Assembly (NCBI GenBank): GCA_048013815.1
Contig: CM106585.1
Location: forward strand, 124,001 to 188,000
DNA: 64,000 nucleotides
From: Setoptus koraiensis
Lineage: Eukaryota; Animalia; Arthropoda
Reading direction: 5' to 3'
The notes below the pieces were generated by a model that saw only the letters and a list, made by a program, of their open reading frames with translations, was not told where the DNA came from and did no database searches. This document shows positions 1 to 22,110 of this stretch, one piece after another; within the stretch, counting starts at the first letter, position 1; every line of letters begins with the position of its first letter. The translations under genes and the position numbers were made by a program.

Positions 1-1413
1 TGTACTTGTTCATTGATCTCTCTGTCTCTTTTCGCATTTTTCCTTGTTTTGCATCATCGCTAGAGGTAGAAATAATTGGAACAAAATACAGGTCATTTTG
101 TATCTTGAATCATCTCGGATGGGTAAGTAATCATATGGAAGATTGGTTGTCGAAGCATCAATTCTATTCGTACTCCCGCAAAACACGACTGGAATCAATT
201 GTGCATTGATGATTGATTTTAAATAATTTCTCTCCAGGGCATTGGAATGTTTCTTGCGCCATTGGTAGGTCATTTTGCTCATCAATGGAGATATCTTATT
301 GCTGTTATACCTGTTACAAATGCGCTAATGTAAGTCTAAAACATCATCAGTTATCAACAAATGATAGCCACAGTATCCAATCCAAGTACTTTTGGTGGAT
401 TTACTCATTATATGTTTGTTTCATATAATCGTATTCGATTAGGATGCCATGGATGTTTATCTTGCCAGAATCTATCAGATGGCTGATACTGAACAACGAG
501 ATGGACAAGGCTAGAAAAGAGATCAAAAGAGCCTCCAAATTCAATAGGTTGAGTCATGTGGATTTTGACCAGAAGATTGACAAGTTTTTGGTCAAGAAAA
601 AGCTCGATGTAAGCCTTTTATTTCATCTTAAGCTAGATATCGAGACAAGACTACCTACTTACAAAATTTTTTATTCGTTCTCTCTCGATCGATAAAATGT
701 AGCAAATGGATTGTTCAGAATCTCGTGGCTCCGTCACTAAGCTGTTCACCAATAGTGCTCTGCTAAAAGCCATGATCATACTAAGCTCTGTGTACTTCAT
801 GTTGATGTATATCTTTTACGCCAGGACATTACATTTTGCACCCGACGAAGCATCCATGTTTGCTAATTTCTTAATTACGGGGACGGGTGAATGGATAAGT
901 TTATTCATATCTACAATAAGCGTTTTGTACATATCGAGAAAGGGCTGTTTGGCAATATCCCTAACAATCACTTCTGCTTCTCTAATTGTCGAGGCAATTG
1001 CCCACAGTACAATGGATTCTGTTTGGCCAATATTGGATTACACAACAGAGGCATCGATCAAAGTGTTTGTAATGTGTGCAACATTGATAACAATTTTAGT
1101 GAATTTAGAAACACTTCCGACTGAATTAAGACAAAGTGGTACAACTGTCGTTTGTATTATGGGTTGTATAGGCACGGCAATCGCTCCATTTTATATTAGA
1201 CTCAATGAGATACTAGGACACATATCACACACTCTTCTATTGGCTCTAATAACAATATTGCTGGCAATATCTATCCAATATTTTCTCAGAGAGACAGGAA
1301 AAAGTGAAATTATTGACGCTGTGGCAACTAAAGCTCATCCTGACAATAAACCCACCAAGCTGAGCTCCGTTATTAGTAACAAAGACGACCACAATGAAAC
1401 TGTTCAAGATTGA
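1..1413 (+). CDS. SLC22/organic cation transporter-like MFS protein, 5' truncated by the window edge; exons <1-122, 238-329, 443-608, 703-1413
   Basis: Three GT-AG introns (GTAAGT at 123 and 330, GTAAGC at 609) join the frames without stops: EIIGTKYRS..LGW|GIGMFLAPLVGHFAHQWRYL..|MPWMFILPESIRWL..|Q-MDC..ETLPTELRQSG..LRETGK. The PESxRWL, ExxPTxxR and LxET motifs are typical of SLC22. Confidence 0.8.
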
Positions 1414-2725: not shown

Positions 2726-4564
2726 ATGTTGTCAGGATTACTATTGAGGACAGTTCCGAAAACGGCGCAACTAGTTTGTAGAGGACCTCAAATTATTAGA
2801 ACTCTAACCTCAACTAGACCAAATTACGTTGTTACCACCCATTACAAAACTATAGATCGATCCAAAGATGAAAGATGGAAAGACATTGATATGGAGCGTG
2901 TCGTTGATGAAACCGACATATTAATCGTAGGTGGGGGACCAGCTGGATTGGCGACAGCCATAAAATTGAAACAACTAGCCAATCAAAATGGTAAGGAGCT
3001 CAGAGTTTGCCTCATCGAGAAGGCTGCCGAGATTGGGGGCCACACTCTCAGTGGTGCTTGTATTGAAACAGCTCCGATAGATGAATTAATACCCGACTGG
3101 AAGTCGGACCCAGATTGTCCAATTAAGACACCAGTTACTAAAGACAAATTTAGTTATTTAACCGAAACAAGGAGTATTAGTATTCCTGTGTTCAAAGGAA
3201 CACCAATGTACAATCACGGTAATTACGTTGTTCGCTTGGGACACGTTGTTAAATGGCTAGGCCAGAAAGCTGAAGAACTTGGAGTAGAAATTTACAATGG
3301 ATATGCCGCCCAGGAGATTCTGATGGACGATGAGAATCAATTTGTCAAAGGTGTTGCCACAGGAGATGTGGGTATTTCCAAAGACGGTTCACCCAAATCC
3401 CAATTTGAGCGTGGAATGGAGTTACATTCAAAACTAACAGTATTCGCCGAAGGTTGCCGGGGTCATTTAGCAAAAGAACTGATAAAAAAGTATAATCTGG
3501 GAAAAAATAGCGATCCACAACATTATGGTATTGGATTAAAAGAGTTGTGGGTAATAGATAAGGCGTTGCACAATCCGGGACAAGTAGAGCATACCATAGG
3601 TTGGCCATTGGGAAAGGACACTTATGGCGGATCATTCTTATATCATTTAAATGAGGAACAACCAATCATTGCAGTGGGCTTCGTAGTAGGATTAGATTAT
3701 AAGAATCCCTATCTCAGTCCCTATAGAGAGTTCCAGCGTTACAAACTACATCCTTTTGTAAGAAAATACTTTGACAATAGCGCAGCGCAAAGGATTGGCT
3801 ATGGAGCTAGAGCCCTCAACGAAGGTGGATATCAATCAATACCCAAATTAACATTCCCTGGCGGTTGTCTGATAGGCTGCTCCGCGGGCCTGCTGAATGT
3901 GCCGAAAATTAAGGGCACCCACAATGCAATAAAAAGTGGAATAATTGCGGCCGAAAGTATATACGATTCTTACGAGAAGAATCTCCTCAGCGACTATGGT
4001 CATGATCCGGAAGAGTACGAGACTAATTTGCGCTCTAGCGAAGTCTGGAAAGAACTGTACAAAGTAAGGAATGTTAAGCCGTCTTTTGAAACAAAACTGG
4101 GATTGTATGGCATGTTGGCTTACGGTGGTGTGTCACAATTGCTATTCCGTGGCAATGAGCCTTGGACATTGTCACACTCGCACCCTGATAATACCAAATT
4201 GTTGCCTGCGGATCAATGTAAGGATATTGAATATCCAAAACCGGATGGAAAGATAACATTTGATATATTGTCATCTGTTGCATTGACTGGAACAAATCAC
4301 GAGGGCGATCAACCTGCTCATTTGACGCTAAAAGATGATACGCTACCAGAAAGTGAGAATTATCCTAAATATGCGGGCCCTGAATCGCGTTATTGCCCAG
4401 CTGGAGTGTACGAATACAACGCGGACGAGAATGGAAAGTTTAAGTTGCAAATTAATGCACAAAATTGTATACATTGTAAAACTTGTGATATTAAAGACCC
4501 TAATCAGAACATTAATTGGGTGGCGCCAGAGAATGGTGGCGGGCCCGCCTACAACGGAATGTAA
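2726..4564 (+). CDS. ETFDH: Electron transfer flavoprotein-ubiquinone oxidoreductase, mitochondrial, intronless
   Basis: 612-aa ORF with a basic presequence, FAD-binding IVGGGPAGL, and C-terminal 4Fe-4S motifs RYCPAGVYE and [13 protein letters not shown]. Confidence 0.97.
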
Positions 4565-4683
4565 CAGACACAACCAATCCAACTATAATAAATATTGTTG
4601 ACAAGCTTATAGATAATATATATATATATATATATACATGAATGTATATTATTGATTGATTTAATAATAAATTTATTTATTGT

Positions 4684-5823
4684 TTACGGTTTTTTAGACA
4701 AATCTAGAGGGGCATTTTGATTGAATACATAGACGTACATGTTAGATGAGTGTGATGGCTTTGTGTGATGCTGTTGTTGGTGGCGATTGGCATTGTTGAG
4801 GTTGTTGTTGTTGTTGTTATTGTTGTTGTTGTTGTGTGGGTGATGATGATGATGGTGATTATGATGATGGGGTAGTTGTTGGTTAGCTGGGGATGATGGT
4901 TGTGAGCGTGGGTTATGATGATGATGGTTTAATTGTAATGGTTGTTGTTGTTGTTGTTGTTGTAATTGGCTAGCCGAAGACGATGGTTGTAAGTGTGTTG
5001 TGTGATGATGAAGAAGATGATCTTGGCGCAATTGTAATTGTTGTATTCCGGACAACAAGGGCAGTACGTGCGAAGTGTGATGATTATGATGGTGCTGCTG
5101 GTGGTTGTGATGAAGGTGATGTAGTGGGTTAGCTGAAGTAGATGATTGTGATTGTGCATTGAGTTGATGGTGTTGATGATGATTATGATTAAGTTGGTTT
5201 GGGTGCACGTGTGCGTTTGCGTTATTTGTGATTGTTGTAGCAGTTGTAGTTGTTGTGGTTGTTGTTGGTGTTGTTGTTGGTGTTGTTGTTGTGTTGGTTG
5301 TTGCCGATGATGATGATGATGTTGTTGTTTGCAGTTGACTTGGTGACGACGACGAGGTAGATGACGAGGATGACGAGGAGGACTTTTTTATCCTAGGTCC
5401 TCTTTTTGTTCCATATACATCAATGAAATGTGTGTTAGTTGTTCCGTCGCTGTTCAACACAGTAGATGGTTGATGCTCATATTTGCGTAGGTGCAATTTT
5501 AAACTGTGCAAATATTTTGTGGCGTAACGACAGTCTCGACAACAGTAGGGATATTTGTCCGAATGTGACTTCATGTGACTATTTAGCATTGATTTGTTGA
5601 CGCATTCGTATTTGCAAATGTGACACCTGAATGGCTTTAGGCCACTGTGATTGCGATGATGATATTCCAAATGGTGTTTGTATTCTGTGACAAATGCACA
5701 TTTGTCGCAGCATAACAATTTCTCTGGTTTCATATGTTGACGAGAATGTTGCCAAAAGTCACTCTTGCTGTTGAACACATGATTGCATTGGCGACACTTG
5801 TACTCTCTGACTTTGTTGGCCAT
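4684..5823 (-). CDS. hb: Hunchback C2H2 zinc-finger transcription factor (four central fingers only)
   Basis: Fingers [51 protein letters not shown] and [23 protein letters not shown], followed by the hb-typical [17 protein letters not shown] box. Then poly-S/T/H/Q/N tracts and a terminal PLDLSKK. Confidence 0.92.
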
Positions 5824-5949
5824 TGCTGTGTTGGCTCTGTTATTGGGCGCTTGTTGGGTATATTTTTGCTATTGGTTAGTCTGCTGATAGCTGATTTTTG
5901 ATTTCTGATTGTTGATTGTTGATTGGGCAAGCTTGTTGCTGCTGGTTGA

Positions 5950-6050
5950 TATCAATCAGTTGCTGATGCCAGTCGCTTGCTGATGCCAGCCGATGGTCGC
6001 TGCCAGCCGATTGTTGGTGCCAGCCGATTGTTGATGCCGGTCAATTGTTG
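5950..6050. repeat. Degenerate ~17-bp tandem array (GTTGATGCCAGCCGATT-like), about 5 units, in the hb leader
   Basis: Units such as gctgatgccagccgat, gctgccagccgatt, gttggtgccagccgatt and gttgatgccggtcaatt are visible. Confidence 0.7.
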
Positions 6051-8255
6051 ATATCGTCGGTATCAGTCGAATGTCGGTGTATGGGGTCGAGTTGCATTGG
6101 CGAGTCTTGTTTGTTTATCGGCGATTATTTATAAAATAATAATAGTGATCGGCGAAGAATTGAGAAGTTGTTGTAATAAGTGAGAGTGCATTCGATTTGC
6201 TCGCCACACACAACTTTTTGTCACAGTTTTGTTGCTCTTGTTGGCGTGCGCCGCTGTGCGCACTCCCTCACACCATTGGCTGTGTTTTAGCCTAGAGCGC
6301 AGTGTAGCAGCCTCGGGCCCACTCGCTCTCGCTCACTAACATTCTTTGTGTGCGTGCGCAAAAAAAGTGTGTTGGCCTGCTCAAAAAGTGATGACGCTGC
6401 GCATGGGCACTGACCATTTTTTGCGCGCCAGCAGCCTATCTATTGGTCCATTTCTCTCTACATTTGTATGCCCGTCTCTACTCTCTTTGCCCCCCTTTAC
6501 ATTCTGCCTGCGTCTTTACATTTTGTGCCCGTCTGTCCGTCCGTCCGTCTCTGTGGCACGACAACAACAGCAACAACAGCAACAACAACAACAACAAGCA
6601 ACAACAAGCAACAACAACAACGACAAGCAACAAACTGGCTTGCGAACGCCAATCTCGATGCAGCACGCTGACCGCTGCTAAAACGCCACTGCGCATGCTC
6701 TCTCAAGACGAGCTGTTGCTACATAGAGCCGCATGCACACTCTCTAGCTAGCTCACTGGGTAGCTAGAGACTGTCTGCTAGGCACTCGCTTGGGTATCCC
6801 CCCCCCCTGACGAAATTTTACTATTTATTGTGGTAAAATTACTTACCAATAGTGCCAATGCCCAACAAATACCCAATCACCTGTGTCTGCCCGTAGCGTT
6901 GGCCCGCAGCGTTGGCGCGTAGCAATGGTCCGCAACAATGGCCCGTCCAAATACCCAAAGGGGTCACGGGGGTAGCTAGAGAGCGGGTGCGAGGCTAAAG
7001 GCCAGGTACCTGCAAGCAGTGCCTATAGTGACACTGATACTGGTGCAGCTACACACAATTAGATTGTTGTTGTGCATATCATTATACTGCTAGCAGTTGT
7101 TGTCGCATATCATCAGTTTTTGTGCGTGTCTTCAGTTTTTATTTTGTTATTATCAATTGTCATCTCTCTTCGCGACAACTACAACAACAACAACTGCAAC
7201 AACGACTGCTTGTGTTGCCGCTAGTTGAGCTGCACGCAGCAACCCATCGAACGAGCAGCGCTCGCAACAATATAATCACCAGGCACACTGCACAAAACGT
7301 CGATTTAAGACGATAGCAACAACAGCAACAACAACAACACAAACGTGTGTTTTAATCGCTGATCAAAGTGACGATTAGAGCACGTTGTTGAGTTCGCATC
7401 AGTTGTATAGAAGCAGCAACAGCCAAGAGAACACAAGATGAAGAACAACACGAGACACTGAGATAGACAAACAATGAAATTAGCGGTCAAGATTGGCGTT
7501 GCTTACAAAGCTTGTTAGAGGTTGCTCTCTCTAACAATTGTAAACAGCTCGCTACTCTCGCACAATCACAGCAACGTGTTTCTACACACTAACACGCACA
7601 AGCACGCACATTTGACCCCTGGCTCGTACAAGTGTAGTTATAGTTAGTTATAGCTAGTTATAGTTAGTTGGCCCGGACACACGATATCATGTCACAATAT
7701 CGACAACATTGACCACGTCGACAACATCGACCATGTCGACTACATCGACAATGTCTCGGCAGAGCCCCAACAAGACGCAAAAAGTCGACGTAAAACGTCG
7801 TTTTATACATTGCCATACATACATACCAACCGACCAATGAGACTAGCGAGACAAACCGAGTGCACATTCTTGCACTTGTAACAACTGTTTGCGCACATTG
7901 CTGGTCCACTGCGCCACCTCGCGCAGCACCTATATAAACACAACTAAACTACACTATACTACCGGCTACTTGGGCCGGCACAGTTAGCCATAGTAGTTGT
8001 GTCGTGTGCAAACAACTGTGCACTTTTTGGGCCCCACTTATAAACAAATGGGGCTACTGTCATAACCAATGATGACGCAATACTGTAATACGATGATGAC
8101 TGTGGCTCTGTCAGGCTTACAGTGTGCGTGTGACAACAATGGTACAAAGTATTCATTCTATATATATATATTCATTCACCTATGGATGGATATATGAATG
8201 AATACGAGAATGAATATGCGAATGAATCTATGAATGGGCATGCGAATAGGTGTGT

Positions 8256-8358
8256 GAATGAATATGTGAATGAATATACTGAATGAATATCTCGAATGAA
8301 TATACTGAATGAATATCTCGAATGAATATACTGAATGAATATCTCGAATGAATATTTC
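8256..8358. repeat. 13-bp tandem array with 26-bp higher-order structure
   Basis: GAATGAATATACT alternates with GAATGAATATCTC three times (8268-8345), with one variant unit on each side. Confidence 0.95.
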
Positions 8359-10900
8359 GAATGTGACCAGACTGGCCGCTGGCCGAATTTGTGCCTGTCG
8401 GCGTGTTGATTGGCCGAAGCAGAGCGACAAAACCGGTGAGGCCAAGCACAAATGAATGAGCAGTTTTGATGGGAGCCATCACGATTATCAGTTATTATCG
8501 GTGTGTGTGTGTGTTGTGGCGCAAGTGAGAAGAACGCATTCACAATTGCCGGTGACCGTGCTATTGGTGTTACAATTGGAACGGTTGCTTCTGTTTGCAG
8601 CGACAGCGGCACGACTAAAATCATCATTATCTAATGGCGTCATCATTATCGCGAAAGCGTCCTGTCTATTTCCTGTTTAGTCACTAAACTTTGTTGTGTG
8701 CGCGCACTGTTTGTGCCACGAAACGCATCAGTGTAGGTGTCAGAGTGTCTCTCTAGTGTCATATTTGTCACCTTGTTGTATAGTTTGTTGTTCGTACAGT
8801 TTGTTGTAGTGGCTCACTTGGCAAGTTGTTGTTGTTGATGTAGCTCTGTCAATTTGCTATGCTCGTCGGCAACTCACATGAGCAGCATGCAGCATCACTC
8901 ATGCGACGGCATAAATACGCCAGACGCATAATTCACGTGAGCGCCAATAATTCCAATAAAAGCTGGCTCCATCTTTTATTTATCTCCAGTTGCTGGGATT
9001 GGCACCGGCCACTGGCCACTGACACTGACATGAGCGCTGACACAATGCAATCTGTGACAGTGTCGTGCATCACGACACACTCTACACATACAACCGGTAT
9101 GCATGCAACCGGTACATATGCAACCGATATATATATATATCCGCATGTGTAACCGGTTATCATAACGGTACTCAAATTAGCGCCCGCGAGAGGCGCCAAA
9201 AAGTGTTGCAAATGGCAGACTGGCAACTAACAGCGACAACCAAACAGCACGGTCAGCCGAGTGGCGCGCACAGCCAAATGAGCGTGTTGATTAATCATGC
9301 AATTCATGCATCATCACTAGCGCTAATAATAATAAATACGCAACATTGTGCCATTGCGCACTCTCATTTACATTTGTGCCGTGCATGCAGCATGAGCAGC
9401 ACGACCGCTGACCACTGGTCAGCGCGAGCAACACGTGGTGGCCCGGCCGCACAGGCAGCACAATCAGCACGGGCAGCACATGCAGCACGGGCTGCACAGG
9501 ATTAATGCGTGGTCGCTGGCTCGTGCCAACTAATAATGATTATGGGCGCGCTTGAGATGAATGATGGTCAGGCAATAAATAATAATAATCTTATAAATAC
9601 GATTGTGCGGCCCGCTGGTCGCCGTCGCATGTGCAACTTGCTCGCTGACCGCTGCTCACATATATTGTCAATGCAGTTGTCGGTTGGCTCTGTTTGCGCT
9701 TTGAGCACTGTGAGCGTGATAACTGTGCCTTACTCACTCGCAACTTTTATACGATTGTTGCGTTTGTGCAAAAGTGTGCGCATCGTGAGCTAACCGATTG
9801 TTGGCCCGCTCACTATACCAATCACATGTGTCCGGTCGGCGCAAACTTGACCAGTCGAGTGAGACATTTGTTTGCATCACGAGAGCCCACGTTAAGACTG
9901 CCTACGCTCGTCGGCTGTCGCAATTGGTCCGATTGGGCCGATCGGCCCAATTGGCAGTGGCTAGACACACGAACGTCACTGCCAACTAAACTCGCGAGTG
10001 GCGACTCTCGAGAGCCAGACTGTAAATTGGCAAGCATGTGCATCATGCAATATATTGCGCATCGGACAACAACATGCTCGCAAATAAATCATCATCCTTT
10101 TTATCATCTCTCTGTGCGATCGACTGGCCGTCCATTGATTGGCTGTCGGGCCTGTGGGCCGTCGGCTCGTCTGGCTGTCGGGCCGTCCGCTTGTCGGGCC
10201 GAAAAGTGTGGCCGCAAAAGTGGCCATCAATTGCGCCGGCAACTCTCATTTGCATGCATGCACTCAGCTTGCCCAACAAAAGCAGCAAATATTAAATTAT
10301 CAATAGTTGCGATATAACAACTGTCCGACTGCATGTCCGATGTCCGCCGCAACATTGCAACGGGCATGCTGCGATTGCCGATTGGCCGTTGTGGCCCAAT
10401 AAAGAGCACAACTGTCATATGTCTCTCAATGGACATTACAACAGCAACACAGTAAGTAAATGGCAACGCAGCCAAGTAATTGCCAGCAAACTTAATGACT
10501 CATGATTGTTTCTAGTGGACACTCATCTAATCTAATCATTAGAGCACAACAGAGCCATTGGCAACTTTTACGACTTACAACTTGTTAGTCGCCAGCAACT
10601 CGCAAGCGACTTGCAATCAAATCGCCAGACACTCACAATGATAAAAAGTTTTGCTTCATTCATGTCTGGCTCACTTTGCATTATTATTATTTACACAATA
10701 ACGAGTTACTTGACTGTCGAGTTGAGTAACGGCACGACAGCGGCATCTAGTGGCCGCTCGGCGGCCCCTTATTAATGTTATCGCTGTTACGGAAATCGCA
10801 ATTAGTAATAACCATTGCATCAACGGGCCCATCATTAATAGTTACATGACTATTAATAACCGCGCTCGTTGTAGCTTTACTAGGTGCACTGATTGCAGGT

Positions 10901-10980
10901 ACACTGATTGCTGCTGATTGCAGCTGATTGCAGCTGATTGTAACTGGTTGTAGCTGGTTGTTGCTGGTTGTTGCTGGTTG
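10901..10980. repeat. 10-bp tandem array, 8 units, stepwise divergent
   Basis: acactgattg ctgctgattg cagctgattg cagctgattg taactggttg tagctggttg ttgctggttg ttgctggttg. Confidence 0.9.
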
Positions 10981-11370
10981 TGAGCTGATTGTGAGCTGAA
11001 CCGTCGGAGGCAGCTTGCGTTTGTTGCAAACTGTCGCAAAAAAAAAACAAAAACTTGTCGACAAAGTGTGGCATGCGGTTGGCATATCTGAGGCTGGCAT
11101 TTTGAGCGAACGACGACAGTCGCAAAAAATGGTGCTTGTTGATTTGAACTTGACAGTAGCAGACGGCGGCAAGCTTGTTGTTTGCATGGAGATGTTGCAG
11201 GCATGAACATGCTGTTAATTAATCATTAGCCAGTGTGTTTGTTGGTGTTTTGTGTCGTCTCATTGGACGGGCTGCATTTGGCGAGCGATTCGATGTGTGC
11301 CAGACGCGATGCTGATTTCATTTCACGCTTAATTAATGATCATGTATCTCGCTCTGTGTATGTGTCGCTC

Positions 11371-11450
11371 ATTATGCGTTATTATGCGTTATTATGCGAT
11401 ATTGTGCGTTATTGTGCGTTGTGGTGCGTTGTGGTGCGTTGTGGTGCGAT
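11371..11450. repeat. 10-bp tandem array, 8 units, stepwise divergent
   Basis: attatgcgtt x2, attatgcgat, attgtgcgtt x2, gtggtgcgtt x2, gtggtgcgat. Confidence 0.9.
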
Positions 11451-14349
11451 GGCCCCATGATGCTGCTGCCATGTCACTGTGTTGTGGGTTTGCTTGTTGC
11501 GCAACAGTCAGTTATCCGGCAGATAACTGGCTGATAGAGTGAACAAACTGTAGAAAATAAATGAAGAAAAGGAGCGACAATCGACGACGAGCAATAGCCG
11601 ACAGCACGACAAACAGGACGCGAACAATTGGCGCTCTGGCGCTGATTTTTGTCCGCCACACACAACTCGGTGGTGTGTAGATAACCATAGATCATCGCCT
11701 ACATGATGATTATTATTATTATTGTCAGTGGCTGTAAAAAGTGTACTGATGCAGTGTGATGTAACAGTTGTTAGGCGACGTGTCTGCTGCTTTTTATCTG
11801 TGTTTTATTCGGGATGCGATTGGCAACGTTTCGTTTGTGTGCAAACATTTGCTACTTGCTTGCTTGCCACAAAACCTTGTTGTTCTGCTCGAGAAAAAAC
11901 ACACTCGCTTGCAGAGTCGTGACGCCGACGGTCGAAGAGTCGACAGTCGACAGTCGACAGTCGCAACATGCAAGCCAGCGACAGCCACAACCAACAGCAG
12001 CCAACTTACAGTTACAGTGTCATCGTCGCCAGCCACAATCGCAACATTTGCAATTCCAGATCGCGGAGGAGAAAAAATGAAATAATGAGGCGTCTCATTT
12101 GAAAAATAACAGACACACGGACACACTGACAGGACCTTAATTAATGCTCAATCAATCATTGTTTTGCCGGCTCGTGCCAGTGTGCATGTGTAACTGTTAC
12201 ATATGCAATCGCGATCACATGTATAGTTGTGATATATGCGTTATTGTGCTGGTCGCCACCATTCGCCATCGCAACCGTTCAGTGTGCGACTTCAGTTTCA
12301 AGCCATTGCGGGCTCGTATTCACTCGTAAACTTGTTACAACTCGCCAGTTTTTATCTACAACTTTTTTTTATCATGTCAACTTTACACAATTGATGCTCC
12401 ATTCATAATGATAAGCCATTTATGCAAATTACACCGCGCAACACTGTGTCATGTACTTGTTAGTCGTCGTCGCAATGGCCGTCGCAATCGCCGCAAACTG
12501 TCACATAACTTGTGACTCATAAGCGACGCTAATGAGAAAAGTGTGACTCCCACAACTGACGGTCTTAACAAGCGTGCACTAATTCATCATTATGTGCGCA
12601 TTTACAGTTGCACACTTACATTAATTCGAGGCGCACACCATGGGCACGCCACCTTTTAGCACATGGAACATTGAAACATGTTTTTGGTGCTCGCTGTCGA
12701 CAACTGGCACACGACTCGCAACTATCATTATGCCGTCATCCTCAATCATTAGCGAAACATCAATCTGCGCGCCACTCGCTTGCCACTTTTTACGCACAGC
12801 CGCATGCCAAAATGTGCCACTGCAGTCACTGTGACAAGAACAGCGACAAAGTTTACAGTGCCAGAGCGTCGCTAGGTGCGCGCCTAGCGACACTCTGGCA
12901 TCGACAGACACACCGGTGAGTCTAGCAGCGCACGATCAAGCTGGCGCAGAGTGGCAATGGCACAGTGTGTGTGTGTGTGTGCCGACGGTGTCGTTATTAG
13001 TTATCAATTACTGTCATTATTTGCACAAAACGCGTCGTCTAACGGCAATTGTAACGGCCAACGACACGGGACACAACAGAGCGCAACACACTGACAAGAA
13101 AAACACCCACGCACACGAGCACACAAACAAATATGTGATAGAGACAATCAGGTGATGCGTAACGCAAATGGCGCTAATAAAATCATGTTAATGACACATC
13201 AGAGCAGTGAGCAGTGGCCAATGGTCAAGCTGCTCATTGGCTTATGTAACGTTGGTTTGTGTCTGTGCTGTGCACTCTTTATGTCTTGCTCACTTGGTCA
13301 CTATATGGTCTCTAATGGTCGCATATGCACACATTAATTGGCACATAGATTAGACACAGATTATATTGTTTGTTGTTTATACTTTTGCTACCACTGTTGT
13401 GGCACTGTTGCTGTGCCATTGGCTATTGCTGTGCCATTGCTAAGCTATAGTGACATTGCATCACACAGTGTGTTAGAAGGTGACCAACAGATAGAGATCA
13501 TTGTGGCAAGTGGTCAGTGTTTGTCTTGGCACAGAAGAGCACGCTGTGAGCAGTGTAGTGCAGCACAGAACAGATCAAGGCGCCAAGAGGAAAGCAAAAT
13601 GGCTGCATGTTGCGCCACTAGTTACGACAATCATGGGACCAATAGCAGCGACAGTTAGATAGCGAGCGATGGACACATTATTACGTTTGTTATTATGTTA
13701 TCCATGTGCCGTATGTGCTGTGTCCAGTGGAGTCAAGTGAATAGTTAGTTAGTGATCGCGATCATGATATTTGGCCCAAAGAAACTCACAACTGCAAGCC
13801 ACAACTGCAACTGACCAAGGCAACGGAGCAAGGCGACGGAGCAACGAGTCAACTGACAACGATACTCGCCATTAACAAATGGTGTGTCCCAAGTATCAAT
13901 TGCCAGCCATCGCTTTGCATTGTCTATTGTTTGTTGTGTCTGTTGTTGTGTCTGCTGTTGGCTCTGTTGTCATTGCGTCACCGTGAGTTGATAGCAACAA
14001 TGGCGACTGGCAGTTATGCAATTATGTTGTTGTTTAATGTTCATTTGATGTATGTTAATGGTCAATGTTAATGACTTTTGATTTTGGCCATCTCTTTGGC
14101 TTTGAGCCCACACTCATATCACAGCAGCTCGTGTGCTGCAACTGACACAGCAGTGTCACAGAGCTATGAGTCGCGCTCGCCAGCCATTCGGCCAAACACA
14201 AACCAAACCAAAATGCAGCCCACTGATAGCTTGTCAGGCTCACCGTTGTCAGCATCGTCGAGTTCACTAGGTGAGCTCATTCGTGTGATCGGTTTGCTCA
14301 CTTCCGTCACTAGGTGACTTGCGGTTGCTTTGCGCGCCACCTAGTCAGT

Positions 14350-14489
14350 AGTCGGTAGTCGGTAGTCGGTAGTCGGTAGTCGGTAGTCGGTAGTCGGTAG
14401 TCGGTAGTCGGTAGTCGGTAGTCGGTAGTCGGTAGTCGGTAGTCGGTAGTCGGTAGTCGGTAGTCGGTAGTCGGTAGTCGGTAGTCGGT
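14350..14489. repeat. Perfect heptanucleotide array (AGTCGGT)20
   Basis: 20 identical 7-bp units, with degenerate units agtcagt and ggtcagt at the edges. Confidence 0.97.
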
Positions 14490-17400
14490 AGTCAATGGTC
14501 AGTGGTCAGTAGTCAGCGGTGGGACAGACGAAATGTGTAAAGATGAAATTCATGATGAGTATCATGGTCGCAAGCAGCCGATTTGTGTCATGTTTTGCAT
14601 TTGTGTCGCATGCCACATCTTGCGAGCGACACGAGCGGCATCGATTGCGGCATTGATGGCGCAAGTTAATTCAATGATTCAATGCAACGTCTCGCAATTA
14701 ACAAGATCGACAAACATTGTTGTTTGCGAGCAGCATGTTGGTTGCACATTTATGCAAATGACGATCGAGAGACCACGATCAAAGATTAAAGTCACTGTGC
14801 GCATCTATCGATCGGCTGCGATGATTGCCAGCCGAATGATTGAATAAGTTTCTAATGGCCATTGGATAATCGATGTGAGCCGCACGAGGCATCGCTAGCA
14901 ACTTGGTGGTGCCAGAGCAAGTGACGCTCTAACGATGCAATCATGTTTGCAAAATATGCGAAATATGCGCAAGAGTTCAACGCTCTCTCTCTCTCTCTCT
15001 CTGTCTCTGTCTCGGCTGTCGTCTCTGGTTCGGCCTGTGGACAGCGACTGACCAGCGACTGACCAGCGACTGACCAGCGACTGGACAGCGACTGGCCAGT
15101 AGTCGCGACTGGTGCCAGCGATGACAAAACGCGATCGATGCGCGGCCATCGATGCAACGACGATAATGACGACGCCTAGTTCAATTATTCGACACTTGCC
15201 ACACTTGATCTGTCAGTGTGTCGCGGTTGCCACACAACATGTGCCAACAGCAGCCGCCAACAACAAGTGCAATATTGTCAATGAATGCACATTATTGGCC
15301 GACTTGTATATGATATCGGCACAATGCTGGCCACTGTGCTGCAAAACAAACCGGTCGCCGGCCATTGATTTGCGCGTGCCGTGCTCGCGCATGTGAGCTT
15401 GTGCTGTGCTGTCGTGCGCGCCTAACGGTCAGTTTTGGTGGGTGATATATGCCAGCCAGCGACGTATGCAAACCAGTGATATGTCTGCAGCATATTTAGC
15501 AGTGTGTGTGTGTGAGTGTTGGGCCGATGACCGATGCGTGGGCGACATTGGCACCAGAAGCGGCAGATGACGCGCCGGCGGCCAGTATTTGCGCGTTTGC
15601 CGACGCTTGCAGCGAGAGCGGTGGCGGTGGCGGCGAGCAGTGAGCTACTAAATAGTAGTTAGCAGTGGACGAAATAGTAAAAAATAGCCGGTTGCTGGTG
15701 GCACGAGTTGTACATGTTGCACGCACACGCTCATTGTTGTATTCAAATGAGTGTGCATCTCATGCGTTACTCGTGCCAGTCTCGTGCAAGCCACTATTAG
15801 CGACACTATTGATAGCATCGCCAATGCTCGCATCACAAATAGATGAATGAACGGACAAACAAATGCAATTTACTGTGAGCAGTGACCACCACCACACCGA
15901 GTGAGCACAGCAAACAACAAAAGGTGACGCAAACGCGCATAAACGAGTAACGCCAGCTGACCATTGGTCAGTGGTGCAGCCGACGCACACTGACTCAGTG
16001 TCACCGAGTGCTGCAGCAGCCCACTCACACTGACAATTGTGAGTGGTGCAGCGGCCCTGCTCGCGCGGCCTGTGCAACAGGCGACAGTGCTGCAAAGTGG
16101 TGCAAATGCAGCAAAGATGCGCTCCTTTTTTCGAGCAACTTGCGGGCTCCGCTTTCGCCCGCCGGCCCGACCTTCACGCACCGTTATACGCGCCGCTATG
16201 CGCCCCGGTGCCGGCTCACTTGCGAGCCGTTTGGTGCCGCAAAACGCACAACTTTGCGAAACTCTACAACTGTGCACCGTCGACCGACACAAGCGCCAAT
16301 GCCGAGCGAAACTCTCGCTGGCCGGTGCAGGGTCACTGCGAATGGTGCATCTGCACCATTAGGCGCGTTGTCCAGTTGCGGGCGCCGCTCGAACACGCCG
16401 GCGCACGCCAGAGTTTATTGACTATTCACGTAAACTGCAAACTGCCAACAGAGAACAAAGGTTTACATAACTCGCCACTGACCCGGCGACACTGCGCACC
16501 GCTGGTCGCACTGGTCCGCATCGCGGGTATCGCGGGTATCGCCGACATCGCCAGCATCGCCGGTACGGCCGGTGATACTCGTGATTGGGCCCGACCAGCG
16601 ACACCGGCGCTAATGGTGGGGCCGGCCGCATCAGCTGTGCGGCGCGACATGGATCATTTTGGAGGAATCATTTCGAGTGATCGATTGTTGGCGAGTAACG
16701 GTGCCCACGCGACTGCTGGCCTGACCATTGACATTGACACAACATCGGCACGTTGACACACAGGCGCAGTTTTAATGTGGCAACGCGCTGGCACAGTGAG
16801 CACTTTTGCACAACACTTTTTCACGCGACCTAGGGCTATTATTGTTTTTCTATCCGACAATATCCAACACTGACCAGCACTGACCAATGCAATCCAATGC
16901 CGCCTAATGCCGTAGACAAACACGCACCGTGGACGGTGTTTATTAGCTAACAGCGCCAGTTTTATTCAAAACTGACCGGTCGCATTTGCGCCATCGTTTG
17001 TTTATTTCGTTTATCTGGCCGCGCGGCCAACAACTGTGTGCAGTCTGTGCCGATGACCACATGAGCGCCATGTGCTCTCATATGTGTATACGCGCGCACA
17101 GTCGAGTAAAAATTGTCACAGTGCTCCGTTATACGTCGCGTTTGTTATAACATCGCTGATTGTTAACGTTGCTTGTTATATCATCGGCCAAACGGTCAAA
17201 TGTGGGCCAGTTAGAGGTCGCTTAGAGGCTCGCGCGCGATTGCGTGGGATGCGGTGCCCCAGTGGCCATTTTTCAACATTTCTGGCCCGTGCTGCCGCTC
17301 GCAATATGCCCACAAAATCAAGCGGCGTGTGCAACTGCTAGCCGCTCGCTTCGCAAAGCCCCTTGTACACAAAGTGTGTGCGAGTGACCGTTAGCGATTG

Positions 17401-20400
17401 ATCACTCAGCTGGCTCCGAATCGCCAGCGTCGAACCGCCGGCCGGCGCCAAATTGGCCCAAAATCGCGGGGGTGCCCCGGCCCCACAAACGATGCTATGT
17501 GAACTAACCAGGCAACACGGTGCACGGTTGCGCGCTGTTGTGTAAGTGGACGGCACCATTTGCATAGTCTGTCATAGCTACTCATTACTGTTGATTGGTG
17601 ACCGTTGTTGGTTGCGCAAAAATAGTCTCTCTCTCTGTCTGTCTATCGCCAGTCGTGTGCATGCCGCACATGAGCACGAGCAAACACATGACAATTTTGC
17701 AGCATCGCTAGTGTGCCAAAACTGTCACTGTTCAACAGTGTTGGCGACGGTCAGCAGCGGCCGATAGCCGCGGACCATCCCCGATCGCCCGCAACAGAAT
17801 CCGCCCGGATCGCGCGGATCGACCCGATCGAACGGGACCGGGCGCGCTCGGACGGGACGGCGCCGAGCGGCGTCCGTCACATGCGAAGAGCATGTGAGAG
17901 TGGCAACCAGCAGAGGCGCCCTCCCACGCGCCGCACATTGCGCCGTGATTTGCATCGCGCGTCGCATGATTGTCACACTGACAGCTGCATCATTGGCCGA
18001 CAGCATCACTGGACCATTGCACCGATGCACCAATGGTGCATGGATGGTGCACCGTTGGATGGCCCGGCGGCACACATTGGGCAACAATTGTGTAAAATCA
18101 CTCAATAACAACATGAGCATAATAATTGCAAATCGCGTGCCGCGTAATCTGATCGCCTCTCTCATTGTCCGTTTTGTATGTTTGTTTGTGCAACTGTCGC
18201 CTGCTGGCCAGAACTGACATTAGTCGTTTTCTGAGCGACTCAGCCTCGCTGAAGTTGGCCCGCGGTGCACGCTGATGCCAGCATCAACAACTAATTGCGC
18301 CTAAAAAGCGCGCCCTTCCGACGATTGTGGCAATTGTTCAAAAGTCGAAATATACACTGTGATATAACAATGTCAAGCTGGCCTCGCCGACCACTCTCAC
18401 TACTGCTCACAAGTCTGTGCGAGTTGTCGGTGTTGTGAGTCGCAATTGTCACTGTTGTTCTGGCGGCAACAGCAGGTTGTGCAGCACGAGTCGCAGTTGC
18501 CACGAGGACGCTTTATAGGCGCGTTGCTCGTGGCGGCACAGTGAAGCCGCTGTTGCCATCATTTTTGCCATTGGCGACCTTGTGACTCTCAAGTTGCGAG
18601 TGGCGCCTAGTCACCAGCGGCCCTATGCTCTGCGCTGTGCTCTGTGCGCGTCTGTGCTAGCAGGGAGCATAGAGCCGATCGGGCCCTCATTGGGCCCACG
18701 GCAGCCCGACCGACTGAGCAGAACGGCTCTGCGCGGCTCGGTCAACAATGCTGTTCGGCACGTTGCGAGGCACGTAATCTAAAGAACAAATACTGCAAAC
18801 GTCTAAACAAACAGTCAGACAGTGAGCGAGTGCGACAGGCGGACGGATTGCGAAAAATTTTGTTTTATCCAATTTTCGTCGCCAGTCGCACAATCGTATT
18901 GAGCCATCGAAGCGGGCCCAATGGCGGCCCCCGAGAATCGTTTCGCCGAGACGCACAACTCAATTGCGATTGGGCGAGCATTGTTCGCGTACAATTGTCG
19001 CGTCAGTCGCAGCTCGTGTGTGTGTTTGCCTCAGCCAATGGGCGCAAGCAATGTTGCGCAAGAGACTGTGGAGCGATATAGAAAAGTTGGCAGCGTGTGC
19101 GAAAAGCTTTTTGTGTAAATATCTGGCGTGTGCGCTCATCTGCTGCCAAACTACTCAAAGAACACTCAATATGTTGTGTCTCATGTCCACTCAAACAGAA
19201 ATTGGCCTGTCTTCGGCGCGCTCTCTGGCGCGTCCGAATTCGAGCCGCTTCCCCGAATTCGAGCTCCAATTCTGACTGCATTCGAACTCGAACTGCATTC
19301 GAAGGCCGCTCTGAATTCGAAATTGCCAACCGCTCACAACTGGTGCTGTTGTTGCGACGGCAGCCATGGGCGACCATACTGAACTGACCACAGCGCCGCC
19401 AACAGATAAGAGCACGAGTGAAAGTTGAAGAAAATTAGAATACAGTTGCCAGAGTCGCCAGAGTTGCCCCCCCCCCTCGCTTGTTGCAAGAGTTGCCCCC
19501 GTTGCTTATCGCCATCCCCTGCTTGCCGGGCCCAAAGAACGAGCCAAGTTGGCCGAATTTAGAACGCGCGCTGGCTAGAATGTTCTTTGCCCAAAAGAAG
19601 TGAATTGGAAAAACGAGTTGCTGCGCATGCGCTGTCCGGCTCATTTCAGTGCGGGGCCCCATTATAAATTTTAGTTTGACGCTTAGTGAAGCGGAAGCCA
19701 GTAGAGAGAAGAGTGCAGTTAGTTAGGCTGCTCGTGCACACAATCAAACAATTGGTTTGAGAAGGAGAGAGGCAAACTTTTGCAAAGATAACGGTTCAAG
19801 TGTGTGTGTGCATTCTAGACACTCCCAGATACACGAGGCATGCGAATGTTTGAAAAGAATTTCGAATTGGCCGTTGCCAATTCTTTTCCAAACATTCGCA
19901 CAACGCAATTCCACGATACAACCAACCAAACTGAATAGAACTAAACTAAACTGTTTCACAATTGTCTAGTCGATTTGTGATGTGCCACTGTCCTATAAAG
20001 GACGCTCACACTGCCAGCAATGCAAAACATTGTTGCTGCCATCGTCGGCCCGAATAGCCGACAACAGACCAGATAAGACTCAAAAAAGAGACCTATAATG
20101 TCATCTTATTCTTATTCTACGTGTGCGTCATAAGAAGATGATATTTCTTTTTTTTTCTTTCTTTCCTATGACTCTCTTTATAGTGGCGGTTGTGCAATAC
20201 AACTATTATAGGTTCAGTTTTTTGTTGGTTGCGCACTTTTTTTTTCGTTGTTCGTGTGGCACCACAAGCAACCGGAAGTTGCGCTATCGTTGCGTGCTTT
20301 GTCTATTGGATAGAGTGGTGCAAGTGGCCGATTCAATTTGTCGTTCGATCTGTCTACATGATACAACAACCAATCGACGACTGTTCACGCTTGGCAATAT

Positions 20401-22110
20401 CCCTTTTTTCCCCATCCAATAATACGTAATATTATGTAATATTACGTAACATCACCTAATATCACCTAATATCACGTAATATTATGTGTGAATTGTGGGT
20501 TTGCGCATGGAGTGATAGGCGCGTATTTTGCTGCTCATTTAGTCGATGCCGGCTTGTTGTTTGCGCCGCTGATGAACGCACATCGCTAATTGAGTTGTTG
20601 CACTTGGTTGTTGTGGGCAACATTTGTTTGCGGGTGTCACGTTTTGTGGTGTTGCAATAGCTCTGGCTATAACTCTGGTCTGTCGACAACAAATTGTAGT
20701 TGTGCGTGCGCTCGATTTGCTCTATTTACGTCTGACGTGCGATAGCTAACGATTTGTGGTTACGTCATTGACGCAAAACGCGTGTGTGTGTGTGTGTTAT
20801 GTAACTCTCGTTGTGCGTGGGTGTCGAGCAAACGGGCAGCAAAAAGCAAACGATAATGATGAGCTAAACATCGTGACACGATGATTGAGCATGGCTGGTG
20901 TGGCCCGATTAACAAGGCGCCGTTACGCCAAACAGTTGACGAGAAAGCGAGCAGCGGGTCTCTCGCTCGGCTTGACCACTGTCATTAATCAAGCACTGCA
21001 AACGTCATCAAGTCACTCACCGCTCGCTGCTCACTGCTGCTGTCCAAAGACTGTCCACACGCTAATTGGAGCACTTTGCATTGCGCGTCAACAACGAGTT
21101 ACCTTGTTGCGTAACTGCTGACGCTGTTGTCAACTGTGCTCAATTGGTGTCGAGCCAACCTTGGCTTGCAACAACAAATTGATTAATGCGATTCATTATG
21201 CAACTGTTGTGCTGCAACCATCAGTGCACCTCTGGGCCCTCGACTGCTCAATGGCGTGACACTGGCGCGCACAGAGTCTCGCAAGTCGCAATCAATCCAT
21301 CACGAAACGGTCGCTCATTTATCATCGTTACGCAATCGCGTTCGCTTGCGTAACTCATTGTTTTGACGCCTATATGCGCGTTATGTCTGGCAGTCGGTGC
21401 AGCTATTGCCATGGCAGCAGTTTGACACAAATCATGTGATTGGCACTGTCATTTGGCTCATTTCGAGCCTGTCTGCCAAATGTCATCAGCGTCTTGTCAG
21501 CTGATGAGGGCGCCTATGACACCATTATGTGCACGTACTATACAATGCACAGTATGCATGAGCAATAACGGTCGCTGTTATCGATGATTACTTTGTCACC
21601 CGCTGCTCACGCAGCGCGTGCACAAGCCGCTGCACGCACCGCACACTTGCACAGACTCGGCTTGCCGTTTAGACACGCGCGCCCGTTTGCGTGTCTGTGT
21701 CAAACCATCTAGCCATTATATGTGCACAGTATTTATATAAACACTGGCCGGACTGCACATTCACATTGCACGGCCAATGGGGCACATTGGGCACATTAAA
21801 ACCGCACAACACGCGCCACTTGGCCCGGCTTAACTGGCTCCCACAGGCTCGGCATCGCTAAGCCTGGCGTCATTTGCGTCAGATGCGAAAGGGTATACCC
21901 AGTGCCCTCATAGCCAAATTAGGCAGACAGTGCGGGCAGCGCGAGCAGGTATCGAGGGTGGCGCAGCAAAGATGACTCAATTTGGCACGTGGCGGCCACT
22001 TGGCACAGTGCGCCGGTTCAACTGAAACTGTCAGGCATGATCAATAATATTTGGTCTTGTTTCATTACGTTCATTTGTTTCATTGTTGGGCAATGATTGT
22101 CGCCGTTTGC

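What the first reader, a model, noticed from the sequence alone, without database searches (positions are those of the whole stretch)
4684..5823. Hunchback stripped to its four DNA-binding fingers: no C-terminal finger pair, ending in a CtBP motif
Seen: only 7 aa precede finger 1. After the conserved [10 protein letters not shown] box the protein is microsatellite-encoded low complexity and ends PLDLSKKP*. The ETFDH stop codon lies 119 bp further on, so there is no room for more exons before that gene. Known: Hunchback/Ikaros proteins normally carry two C-terminal dimerisation fingers, and PxDLS recruits the CtBP corepressor. Inference: this is a monomeric Hb that may repress through CtBP, which would matter for gap-gene or neuroblast timing in a miniaturised arthropod.
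Basis: partly seen in the sequence, partly recalled or inferred. Interest (0 to 1): 0.7.

Follow-up and report, generated by a model that had tools for sequence, protein, structure and literature searches.

The report
Minimal Hunchback of gall mites
This gall-mite genome encodes a real, complete Hunchback developmental regulator cut down to its four DNA-binding fingers plus a short C-terminal docking motif, and the same stripped-down design is kept in at least eleven related mites, so it is a working natural "mini-Hunchback" and not an annotation artefact.

Summary
The ORF at 4684-5823 (-) is the only hunchback (hb) gene in this 48.7-Mb, two-contig genome. It has 7 residues, then fingers MF1-4, the IDVYGT-RGP box, 229 residues that are mostly trinucleotide-repeat-coded low complexity, and the end [13 protein letters not shown] converges on it 119 bp away.

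Single-sequence and profile searches of the whole genome find no C-terminal dimerisation finger pair and no N-terminal finger pair.

The new result is that this design is not peculiar to this species. Fragariocoptes setiger (Eriophyoidea) has a 157-aa Hb with the same layout and the same convergent ETFDH neighbour. Ten further unnamed 153-206-aa Hbs share the design; the nine placed in the tree group with these two.

The PLDLS box was not gained. It is an ancestral Hb box in ticks, spiders, mites and most insects, normally upstream of the basic box and the C-terminal fingers. Eriophyoid Hb simply ends just after it. The low-complexity stretch is specific to this species.

CtBP is present in the genome. 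A co-fold places NAPLDLSK in the CtBP cleft region (0.67 against 0.01 for the best control). That supports binding but does not prove it.

No RNA evidence could be obtained. The scan had noted only this same stretch before.

The parts
4684..5823 (-). Complete single-exon hunchback CDS (379 aa plus stop)
   Evidence: ORF list and translation. MF domain is 64-71% identical to tick, mite and insect Hb. Only hb locus in G000.
5734..5802 (-). Finger MF1 (residues 8-30)
   Evidence: Alignment A3, with C10, C13, H26 and H30 invariant.
5647..5715 (-). Finger MF2 (residues 37-59), recognition helix [10 protein letters not shown] identical to canonical Hb
   Evidence: Alignment A3.
5563..5631 (-). Finger MF3 (residues 65-87), helix VNKSMLNSH identical to canonical Hb
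   Evidence: Alignment A3.
5473..5547 (-). Finger MF4 (residues 93-117), helix [10 protein letters not shown]. The Cys-to-Leu/Val change is shared with the eriophyoid-type clade.
   Evidence: Alignments A3 and A4.
5395..5424 (-). D-box [10 protein letters not shown] (residues 134-143)
   Evidence: Invariant D135, V136, Y137, G138, T139, R141, G142 and P143 in A3.
4747..5385 (-). Species-specific low-complexity insert (about residues 147-359, rich in S/T/H/Q/N), largely coded by trinucleotide repeats
   Evidence: TRF arrays. Composition and shuffle test. Absent from the 153-206-aa relatives, which have a 15-25-aa Ser-rich linker here.
4687..4710 (-). C-terminal PLDLSKKP (residues 372-379), the conserved Hb LDL box and a PxDLS-type CtBP motif
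   Evidence: Box present in most arthropod Hbs and invariant L-D-L in the eriophyoid-type relatives. Interface residues 370-377 in the co-fold with the mite CtBP.
4672..4681 (-). Two overlapping AATAAA hexamers just after the stop codon (putative poly(A) signals)
   Evidence: Read directly from the sequence. No transcript evidence.
2726..4564 (+). Convergent neighbour ETFDH (ETF-ubiquinone oxidoreductase), an intronless 612-aa gene
   Evidence: Pfam. 72% identical to the ETFDH that converges on hb in Fragariocoptes locus L042.

Best explanation
Shown: this is the complete, single-exon, single-copy hunchback ortholog of an eriophyoid-type mite. The lineage has reduced Hb to a start codon, 3-8 residues, the four DNA-binding fingers MF1-4, usually the D-box, a Ser-rich linker and a C-terminal [P/V/I]LDL[S/R] box followed by a stop. 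The N-terminal region with fingers NF1-2, the extra finger, the basic box and the C-terminal dimerisation finger pair are gone from the whole genome. In this species the linker has been inflated to about 210 residues by trinucleotide-repeat expansion.

Inferred: the protein binds canonical Hb sites, because the recognition helices of F2-F4 are unchanged. It binds without the finger-mediated homodimerisation of canonical Hb and Ikaros. It acts mainly as a repressor by docking the corepressor CtBP through the terminal PLDLSKK motif, and possibly Mi-2 through the D-box region. The LDL box is an ancestral Hb element. Its retention as the last conserved residues in every truncated form argues that it carries an essential effector function.
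For: Identity and uniqueness: Hb hits at E about 1e-60 to 1e-70, and the next-best locus in G000 is only 32% identical.

Absence of other domains: searches of all 48.7 Mb with a single sequence and with profiles (A1 for CF1-2, A2 for NF1-2) give only generic C2H2 matches of 30-36 bits inside unrelated multi-finger ORFs. No Hb motif lies elsewhere in the window.

Gene model: there is an in-frame stop 16 codons upstream, and no upstream ATG within 273 nt. Eriophyoid genomes are mostly intronless (PMC7738191).

Conservation: the Fragariocoptes Hb is 157 aa with the same layout and the same convergent ETFDH. Ten more 153-206-aa proteins share the layout. For the two whose loci were read, in-frame stops lie 10-11 codons upstream of the ATG. 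Nine of the ten were placed in the tree and form a clade with the window and Fragariocoptes at SH-aLRT 86. L-D-L is invariant among the relatives.

LDL box is ancestral: 75 of 186 Hbs carry a strict P-[LIVM]-D-L-[STRK], and most of the others a looser [AV]LDL[ST], upstream of the basic box.

CtBP: three loci in G000 give 383-583 bits to CtBP1/2. The co-fold scores 0.67 against a best control of 0.01. That mark was reached by 51 of 78 solved complexes and 2 of 108 mismatched pairs. The runs agree in at least 33% of contacts, and partner pLDDT is at least 41. The interface is Hb 370-377 on CtBP 134-169.

Literature: Hb dimerises through its C-terminal fingers and interacts with dMi-2, and Ikaros binds CtBP through PEDLS (PMC5393059; PMC6145585).
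Against: No transcript evidence was obtained. The one read-laying run gave contigs only. One run (X4) has very uneven depth that could reflect RNA or amplified DNA, and no splice joints were seen.

CtBP binding is a model result for a short disordered peptide of a kind with solved look-alikes, so the pass may be memory.

Ten of the relatives have [C/F/S][I/V]LDLR in place of PLDLS, which departs from the strict PxDLS consensus, so the box may serve another partner.

The D-box is degenerate or missing in two relatives (P0207, P0217), so Mi-2 recruitment is not universal.

The MF domain sits on a long branch. It is about 71% identical to Fragariocoptes, no better conserved than ETFDH at 72%, so constraint is relaxed compared with other arthropods.
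Confidence: 0.6

Rival explanations
1. The conserved C-terminal LDL box is functional but is not a CtBP motif. It docks another partner, for example as a SUMO-interaction-type hydrophobic core (ILDL flanked by S/D) or for an unknown Hb cofactor. The minimal Hb then works through that partner, or simply by occupying sites.
For: Ten eriophyoid-type relatives have [C/F/S][I/V]LDLRV rather than PxDLS. Beetles and moths have VLDLS or ALDLT. No paper linking Hb to CtBP or PxDLS was found.
Against: The window, Fragariocoptes, ticks, spiders, other mites, Hymenoptera and Hemiptera have a textbook P-L-D-L-S followed by K/R. The co-fold docks exactly this stretch with controls at 0.01. CtBP is retained in three copies in a reduced genome. 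From memory, VLDLS-type variants are discussed as CtBP-related in Drosophila Giant.
Confidence: 0.25
2. The missing Hb parts still exist but are reached by splicing, encoded by a separate gene, or lost in an assembly gap, so the protein is not really minimal.
For: A weak GT (CCG|GTAAAC) overlaps the stop codon. No RNA data were available. The frame upstream of the Fragariocoptes ATG is open for at least 50 codons.
Against: Whole-genome single-sequence and profile searches find no NF1-2, CF1-2 or other Hb box. The assembly is two chromosome-scale contigs. The stop position just after the LDL box is conserved in 12 proteins with different downstream neighbours, ETFDH or MAU2, lying 67-119 bp away. 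The Leptotrombidium full-length Hb is one exon, so no ancestral intron is expected at this position.
Confidence: 0.04
3. The gene is a decaying relic: Hb function has been lost in these simplified mites and the ORF survives by chance.
For: Very long branch of the MF domain (1.57 against a median of 0.09). Invasion by microsatellites. Loss of most domains.
Against: All 16 zinc ligands and the F2-F4 recognition helices are intact. The same compact ORF is kept in at least 12 species that are only 54-64% identical to Fragariocoptes over the protein, with 55 invariant columns. The 229-codon tail stays in frame up to a conserved terminal motif.
Confidence: 0.05

Closest known systems
Canonical arthropod Hunchback (for example Leptotrombidium deliense P0124, Ixodes scapularis P0133, Oncopeltus P0180)
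   Same: Orthologous MF1-4 DNA-binding fingers with identical F2-F4 recognition helices, the D-box, and the LDL (PLDLS) box. Single copy.
   Different: It lacks the whole N-terminal region including fingers NF1-2, the extra finger, the basic box (RRKG-R/K-A) and the C-terminal dimerisation finger pair. The protein ends 3 residues after the LDL box. The finger domain evolves much faster.
Fragariocoptes setiger 'Protein hunchback, partial' (P0200, GCA_019968535.1) and ten unnamed 153-206-aa Hbs from public assemblies
   Same: The same minimal architecture. Fragariocoptes has the same convergent ETFDH neighbour. Derived substitutions are shared (EYH-H/Q-RNH, Y-E/Q-CVNKS, TKY-V/L-HSL).
   Different: They are about 153-206 aa with a 15-25-residue Ser-rich linker, where the window protein carries a repeat-coded insert of about 210 residues. 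The window protein keeps the VLN-DG-N spacer before the D-box that the others lack. Ten of them read [I/V]LDLR instead of PLDLS. The two of those ten whose loci were read lie beside MAU2, not ETFDH.
Ikaros family (vertebrate Hb-like factors)
   Same: N-terminal-type DNA-binding fingers. A PxDLS-type motif (PEDLS in Ikaros) that binds CtBP. Interaction with Mi-2/NuRD (PMC5393059).
   Different: Ikaros function depends on its two C-terminal dimerisation fingers, which are absent here. Natural Ikaros isoforms lose DNA-binding fingers and keep the dimerisation fingers, which is the opposite of this protein.
CtBP-dependent short-range repressors with PxDLS-K/R motifs (Knirps, Kruppel, Snail; adenovirus E1A C-terminus)
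   Same: A DNA-binding domain plus a short linear PxDLS(K/R) motif near the C-terminus. In E1A and here, the motif lies within the last dozen or so residues.
   Different: These are unrelated DNA-binding domains. CtBP dependence is demonstrated for those proteins and only modelled here.

Membership tests
Hunchback orthology group | Four consecutive middle C2H2 fingers with the Hb signature helices ([29 protein letters not shown]) | tested here: met
   Alignment A3: all zinc ligands present and helices identical except C105L. Best database hits are all Hb.
Hunchback orthology group | D-box (IDVYGTRRGP) directly after MF4 | tested here: met
   [10 protein letters not shown] at residues 134-143.
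Hunchback orthology group | Single-copy ortholog placed within arthropod Hb, with lineage-conserved synteny | tested here: met
   Only one locus in G000. Forms a clade with Fragariocoptes Hb. The hb-ETFDH convergent pair is shared.
Hunchback/Ikaros dimerising zinc-finger (DZF) subfamily | Two C-terminal C2H2 fingers (CF1-2) that mediate dimerisation | tested here: not met
   None in the ORF, the window or the whole genome. The best profile hit is 36 bits, partial, inside an unrelated 630-aa multi-finger ORF.
Canonical non-insect arthropod Hb architecture | N-terminal finger pair NF1-2 and N-terminal boxes | tested here: not met
   Seven residues precede MF1, and a stop lies 16 codons upstream. 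Genome-wide searches give only generic C2H2 hits, equal in score to hb's own MF fingers.
Canonical Hb architecture | Basic box (RRKG-R/K-A) and extra finger between MF4 and CF1 | tested here: not met
   Absent from the 229-residue tail and from six-frame searches of the window.
Canonical Hb architecture | Conserved [P/A/V]LDL[S/T] box | tested here: met
   PLDLS at residues 372-376, and the box is found in most arthropod Hbs.
CtBP-recruiting repressors | PxDLS motif, ideally followed by K/R | tested here: met
   PLDLSKK at the C-terminus.
CtBP-recruiting repressors | CtBP encoded in the same genome | tested here: met
   Two tandem 543-aa open frames and a third split copy, 383-583 bits to CtBP1/2 structures.
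CtBP-recruiting repressors | Physical, motif-dependent binding to CtBP and CtBP-dependent repression | not testable with these tools
   Only a co-fold is available: score 0.67 against a best control of 0.01, a mark reached by 51 of 78 solved complexes and 2 of 108 mismatched pairs. Contact agreement is at least 33% and partner pLDDT at least 41. It may reflect memory of solved CtBP-peptide complexes.

The most novel reading that the evidence does not exclude
The LDL box is the ancestral CtBP-recruitment site of arthropod Hunchback. It was overlooked because Diptera, including the fly model, lack it. Eriophyoid mites show that DNA-binding fingers plus this box are sufficient for essential Hb function. 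Finger-mediated dimerisation, the N-terminal fingers and the basic box would then be dispensable accessories that can be lost stepwise. Other acariform mites show forms that look intermediate: with NF1-2 but ending at the LDL box, or ending just after the basic box.
Probability: 0.3. Interest if true: 0.75.

Novelty: new variant of a known kind. Interest (0 to 1): 0.62.

Why it matters
Hunchback is a textbook gap gene and neuroblast timing factor. Its C-terminal dimerisation fingers define the Hb/Ikaros family and underlie the "dimers repress, monomers activate" hypothesis (PMC6145585). A lineage that has kept Hb for a long evolutionary time with only the DNA-binding fingers and one short motif is a natural deletion experiment. 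It suggests which parts are indispensable. It points to a conserved LDL/PxDLS box in most arthropod Hbs for which I found no published study. It also gives a 150-aa protein that can be tested directly in fly or cell assays. Finally, it adds a concrete case to the picture of regulator trimming in miniaturised, body-plan-reduced mites.

Tried and rejected
(1) Transcript evidence. No listed run is recorded as RNA. The single read-laying run returned contigs only. X2 is even DNA. X4 is very uneven, with zero coverage at 9000-9600 and contigs at 4172-4604, 5510-5745 and 5945-6523. It also carries a strand-switch artefact, so it may be RNA or amplified DNA. No splice joints were reported, and I drew no conclusion.

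(2) I first thought loss of the C-terminal fingers was common to all acariform mites, because Halotydeus, Medioppia and three metagenome mites show none within 5-10 kb downstream. I rejected this when Leptotrombidium Hb turned out to have the full set in one exon.

(3) I considered an ancestral intron right after the LDL box to explain ORFs ending there. I rejected it for three reasons. The stop and the five residues before it are conserved in two species (P0018, P0021) while the downstream DNA diverges. Leptotrombidium is intronless there. The Notodromas case is a contig end.

(4) A scan of JGI metagenome contigs with the finger domain found nothing.

(5) Literature searches for Hb with PxDLS, PLDLS or CtBP, or for mite or eriophyoid Hb domain loss, found nothing relevant. 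Tran et al. 2010 (PMC2853844) is not held.

(6) The first word search missed the eriophyoid relatives because of its length filter. Repeating it with the 150-aa finger domain alone found them.

(7) I did not run the large representative-protein search, because the word searches settled the question.

Full report
**What is there**

The minus-strand ORF at 4684-5823 encodes 379 aa. Seven residues precede the first finger. Four C2H2 fingers follow, then [10 protein letters not shown]. After that come 229 residues dominated by H, S, N, Q and T, containing trinucleotide arrays. The protein ends PLDLSKKP and TAA.

ETFDH is an intronless 612-aa ORF at 2726-4564 on the plus strand (Pfam). It converges on hb with 119 bp between the two stop codons. 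A UBC-fold gene lies beyond it.

An in-frame stop lies 16 codons upstream of the ATG, and there is no upstream ATG within 273 nt. The low-complexity tail is open in only 1.3% of dinucleotide-preserving shuffles. More tellingly, it ends in frame with a motif that is conserved in relatives.

Contigs from an independent public run match the finger region and the stop region without a single difference.

**Identity**

The finger domain hits Hunchback proteins of ticks, mites and insects at E about 1e-60 to 1e-70 and 62-70% identity. In alignment A3 all 16 zinc ligands are present, and the recognition helices of fingers 2-4 are identical to canonical Hb except for one Cys-to-Leu change.

The genome (G000) is 48.7 Mb in two contigs. 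It holds one such locus, and the next best match is an unrelated zinc-finger ORF at 32% identity. No second hb paralog exists.

**What is missing, tested across the whole genome**

I searched all of G000 with a C-terminal finger pair (CF1-2) and with a 24-sequence profile of it (A1). I did the same for the N-terminal pair (NF1-2) with a 15-sequence profile (A2).

- The best matches are 30-36 bits, partial, and lie inside long canonical multi-finger ORFs far from hb.
- hb's own middle fingers score the same against the NF profile, which calibrates these hits as generic.
- Full-length mite, tick and spider Hbs find nothing else in the 64-kb window apart from the 8-residue terminal motif.

The N-terminal region with NF1-2, the extra finger, the basic box and the dimerisation pair are therefore absent from the genome, not just from this ORF.

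**The decisive comparison**

My first word search was limited by its length filter and returned no close relative. Repeating it with the 150-aa finger domain alone returned "Protein hunchback, partial" of Fragariocoptes setiger, an eriophyoid mite.

- That protein is 157 aa: Met, four residues, MF1-4, the D-box, a 17-residue linker, PLDLS, eight more residues and a stop.
- Its locus shows ETFDH converging on it 67 bp downstream. This is the same gene pair as in the window, and the two ETFDH proteins are 72% identical.
- Ten further unnamed proteins of 153-206 aa from public assemblies have the same plan: MPKQR, MF1-4, usually a D-box, a Ser-rich linker, [C/F/S][I/V]LDLR plus 5-20 residues, then a stop. 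The 206-aa one carries a 46-residue extension before the conserved MPKQR.
- I read the loci of two of them. The next gene is a convergent cohesin-loader (MAU2-type) gene about 65-75 bp away, and in-frame stops lie 10-11 codons upstream of the ATG.
- In a maximum-likelihood tree the window, Fragariocoptes and nine of these ten form one clade (SH-aLRT 86; the nine have 99). The tenth, P0219, lacked the search pattern used to cut the region and was left out of the tree.
- Across the 12 proteins 55 columns are invariant, including L-D-L of the terminal box among the relatives. MAFFT misplaces the window's own terminal box because of the long insert.

The minimal architecture is thus a conserved, selected state of this mite lineage. 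This also validates the gene model in the window.

Two features are specific to the window species. One is the repeat-coded expansion of the linker by about 210 residues. The other is retention of the VLN-DG-N spacer before the D-box.

**The terminal motif is ancestral**

Among 186 Hb proteins gathered here, 75 carry a strict P-[LIVM]-D-L-[STRK] after the D-box, and most others carry a looser [AV]LDL[ST]. The strict form includes ticks (PLDLSR), spiders and scorpions, Leptotrombidium, oribatid-type mites (PLDLSSNK), Hymenoptera (PLDLSKP) and Hemiptera. The box is missing in the fly-like group.

In full-length proteins it lies a few to a few dozen residues upstream of the basic box and CF1-2. 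Eriophyoid Hb therefore did not gain a CtBP-type motif. It kept this box and lost everything after it.

**Other acariform mites are a mosaic**

- Leptotrombidium has the full set of domains in a single exon.
- Halotydeus ends nine residues after the basic box. Its annotation breaks at a frameshift.
- Oribatid-type proteins replace CF1-2 with a different conserved tail.
- Several unnamed mites keep NF1-2 but end right after the LDL box. In two species the stop is conserved.

For these taxa I could inspect only 5-10 kb of flanking DNA, so those losses are provisional.

**Mechanism**

From the literature, Hb binds DNA with the middle fingers, dimerises through the C-terminal fingers and interacts with dMi-2. 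Ikaros binds CtBP through PEDLS (PMC5393059). The C-terminal fingers are the basis of the hypothesis that Hb dimers repress and monomers activate (PMC6145585).

Here the dimerisation module is absent while the D-box and a textbook PLDLSKK remain. CtBP is encoded at three loci in this reduced genome.

A co-fold of the mite CtBP core with the last 45 Hb residues gave the following:

- It scored 0.67 against 0.01 for the best of three controls.
- That mark was reached by 51 of 78 solved complexes and 2 of 108 mismatched pairs.
- The runs agree in at least 33% of contacts, and partner pLDDT is at least 41.
- The confident interface is Hb 370-377 (NAPLDLSK) against CtBP residues 134-169. By the alignment these correspond to about residues 28-63 of the solved CtBP chain 1hku. 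From memory, that is the N-terminal region where PxDLS peptides bind.

Because CtBP-peptide complexes have been solved, this shows likeness, not binding. I therefore hold the architecture with high confidence (about 0.9) and CtBP-dependent repression by a non-dimerising Hb as the most likely mechanism (about 0.5).

The main rival is that the box serves another partner. The ILDLR variants in ten of the relatives fit that idea.

**Limits**

- I found no RNA evidence.
- The relatives other than Fragariocoptes are unnamed.
- The finger domain evolves fast: its branch length was 1.57 against a median of 0.09 in the first tree, before close relatives were added.
- No published description of this architecture, or of a Hb-CtBP link, was found in the searchable library.

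Noticed in passing
G000:C2:22117910-22118461 and C2:22122625-22123176 (L037, L038); C2:21852592-21853237 (L039, L040): CtBP is present in three copies in this very small genome. Two are tandem 543-aa open frames about 4.7 kb apart, and the third is split into two pieces. All score 383-583 bits to CtBP1/2 structures.
   Followed up: partly
P0115, P0121-P0123, P0129; L023:6050-6330: Oribatid-type Hunchbacks lack the C-terminal finger pair. They end instead in a different, well-conserved motif (…ISKINNATSLLQEILIDMYSLKN…) after the basic box. This may be a replacement C-terminal module.
   Followed up: partly
L022:11480-11870 (Halotydeus destructor, GCA_022750525.1): The annotated Hb (P0009) stops at a frame change. 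The next frame continues with TTPLDLSTK… and the basic box, then ends 9 residues later. The public model is therefore truncated by a frameshift or a short intron.
   Followed up: partly
window 4172-4604 and 5510-8831: Public run X4 has contigs over the ETFDH 3' end, the hb ORF and about 3 kb upstream, none at 9000-9600, and a unitig break at 4172-4201. If X4 is RNA, hb would have a long 3' UTR antisense to the ETFDH coding end. It could equally be amplified DNA.
   Followed up: partly
window 4606-4650 (minus strand, just after the hb stop): The (TA)n microsatellite begins with CATGTATATA, which reads as a UGUAUAUA Pumilio-type element in the putative hb 3' UTR. GTTGT motifs follow further on. 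This may be chance.
   Followed up: no
window 5824-22000: About 16 kb upstream of hb has no ORF with a Pfam hit, and its GC content rises to 0.50-0.57 against about 0.38-0.42 over the neighbouring genes. It is a candidate large regulatory region of hb.
   Followed up: no
window 706-1413 (+): A 235-aa ORF next to the UBC-fold gene has no Pfam match.
   Followed up: no
P0218 (Dracunculus), P0228 (Cichlidogyrus), P0001 (Panagrolaimus): Short or rearranged Hb-like proteins that consist mainly of the four middle fingers are also annotated in some nematodes and a flatworm. Panagrolaimus has the four-finger block twice in one protein.
   Followed up: no
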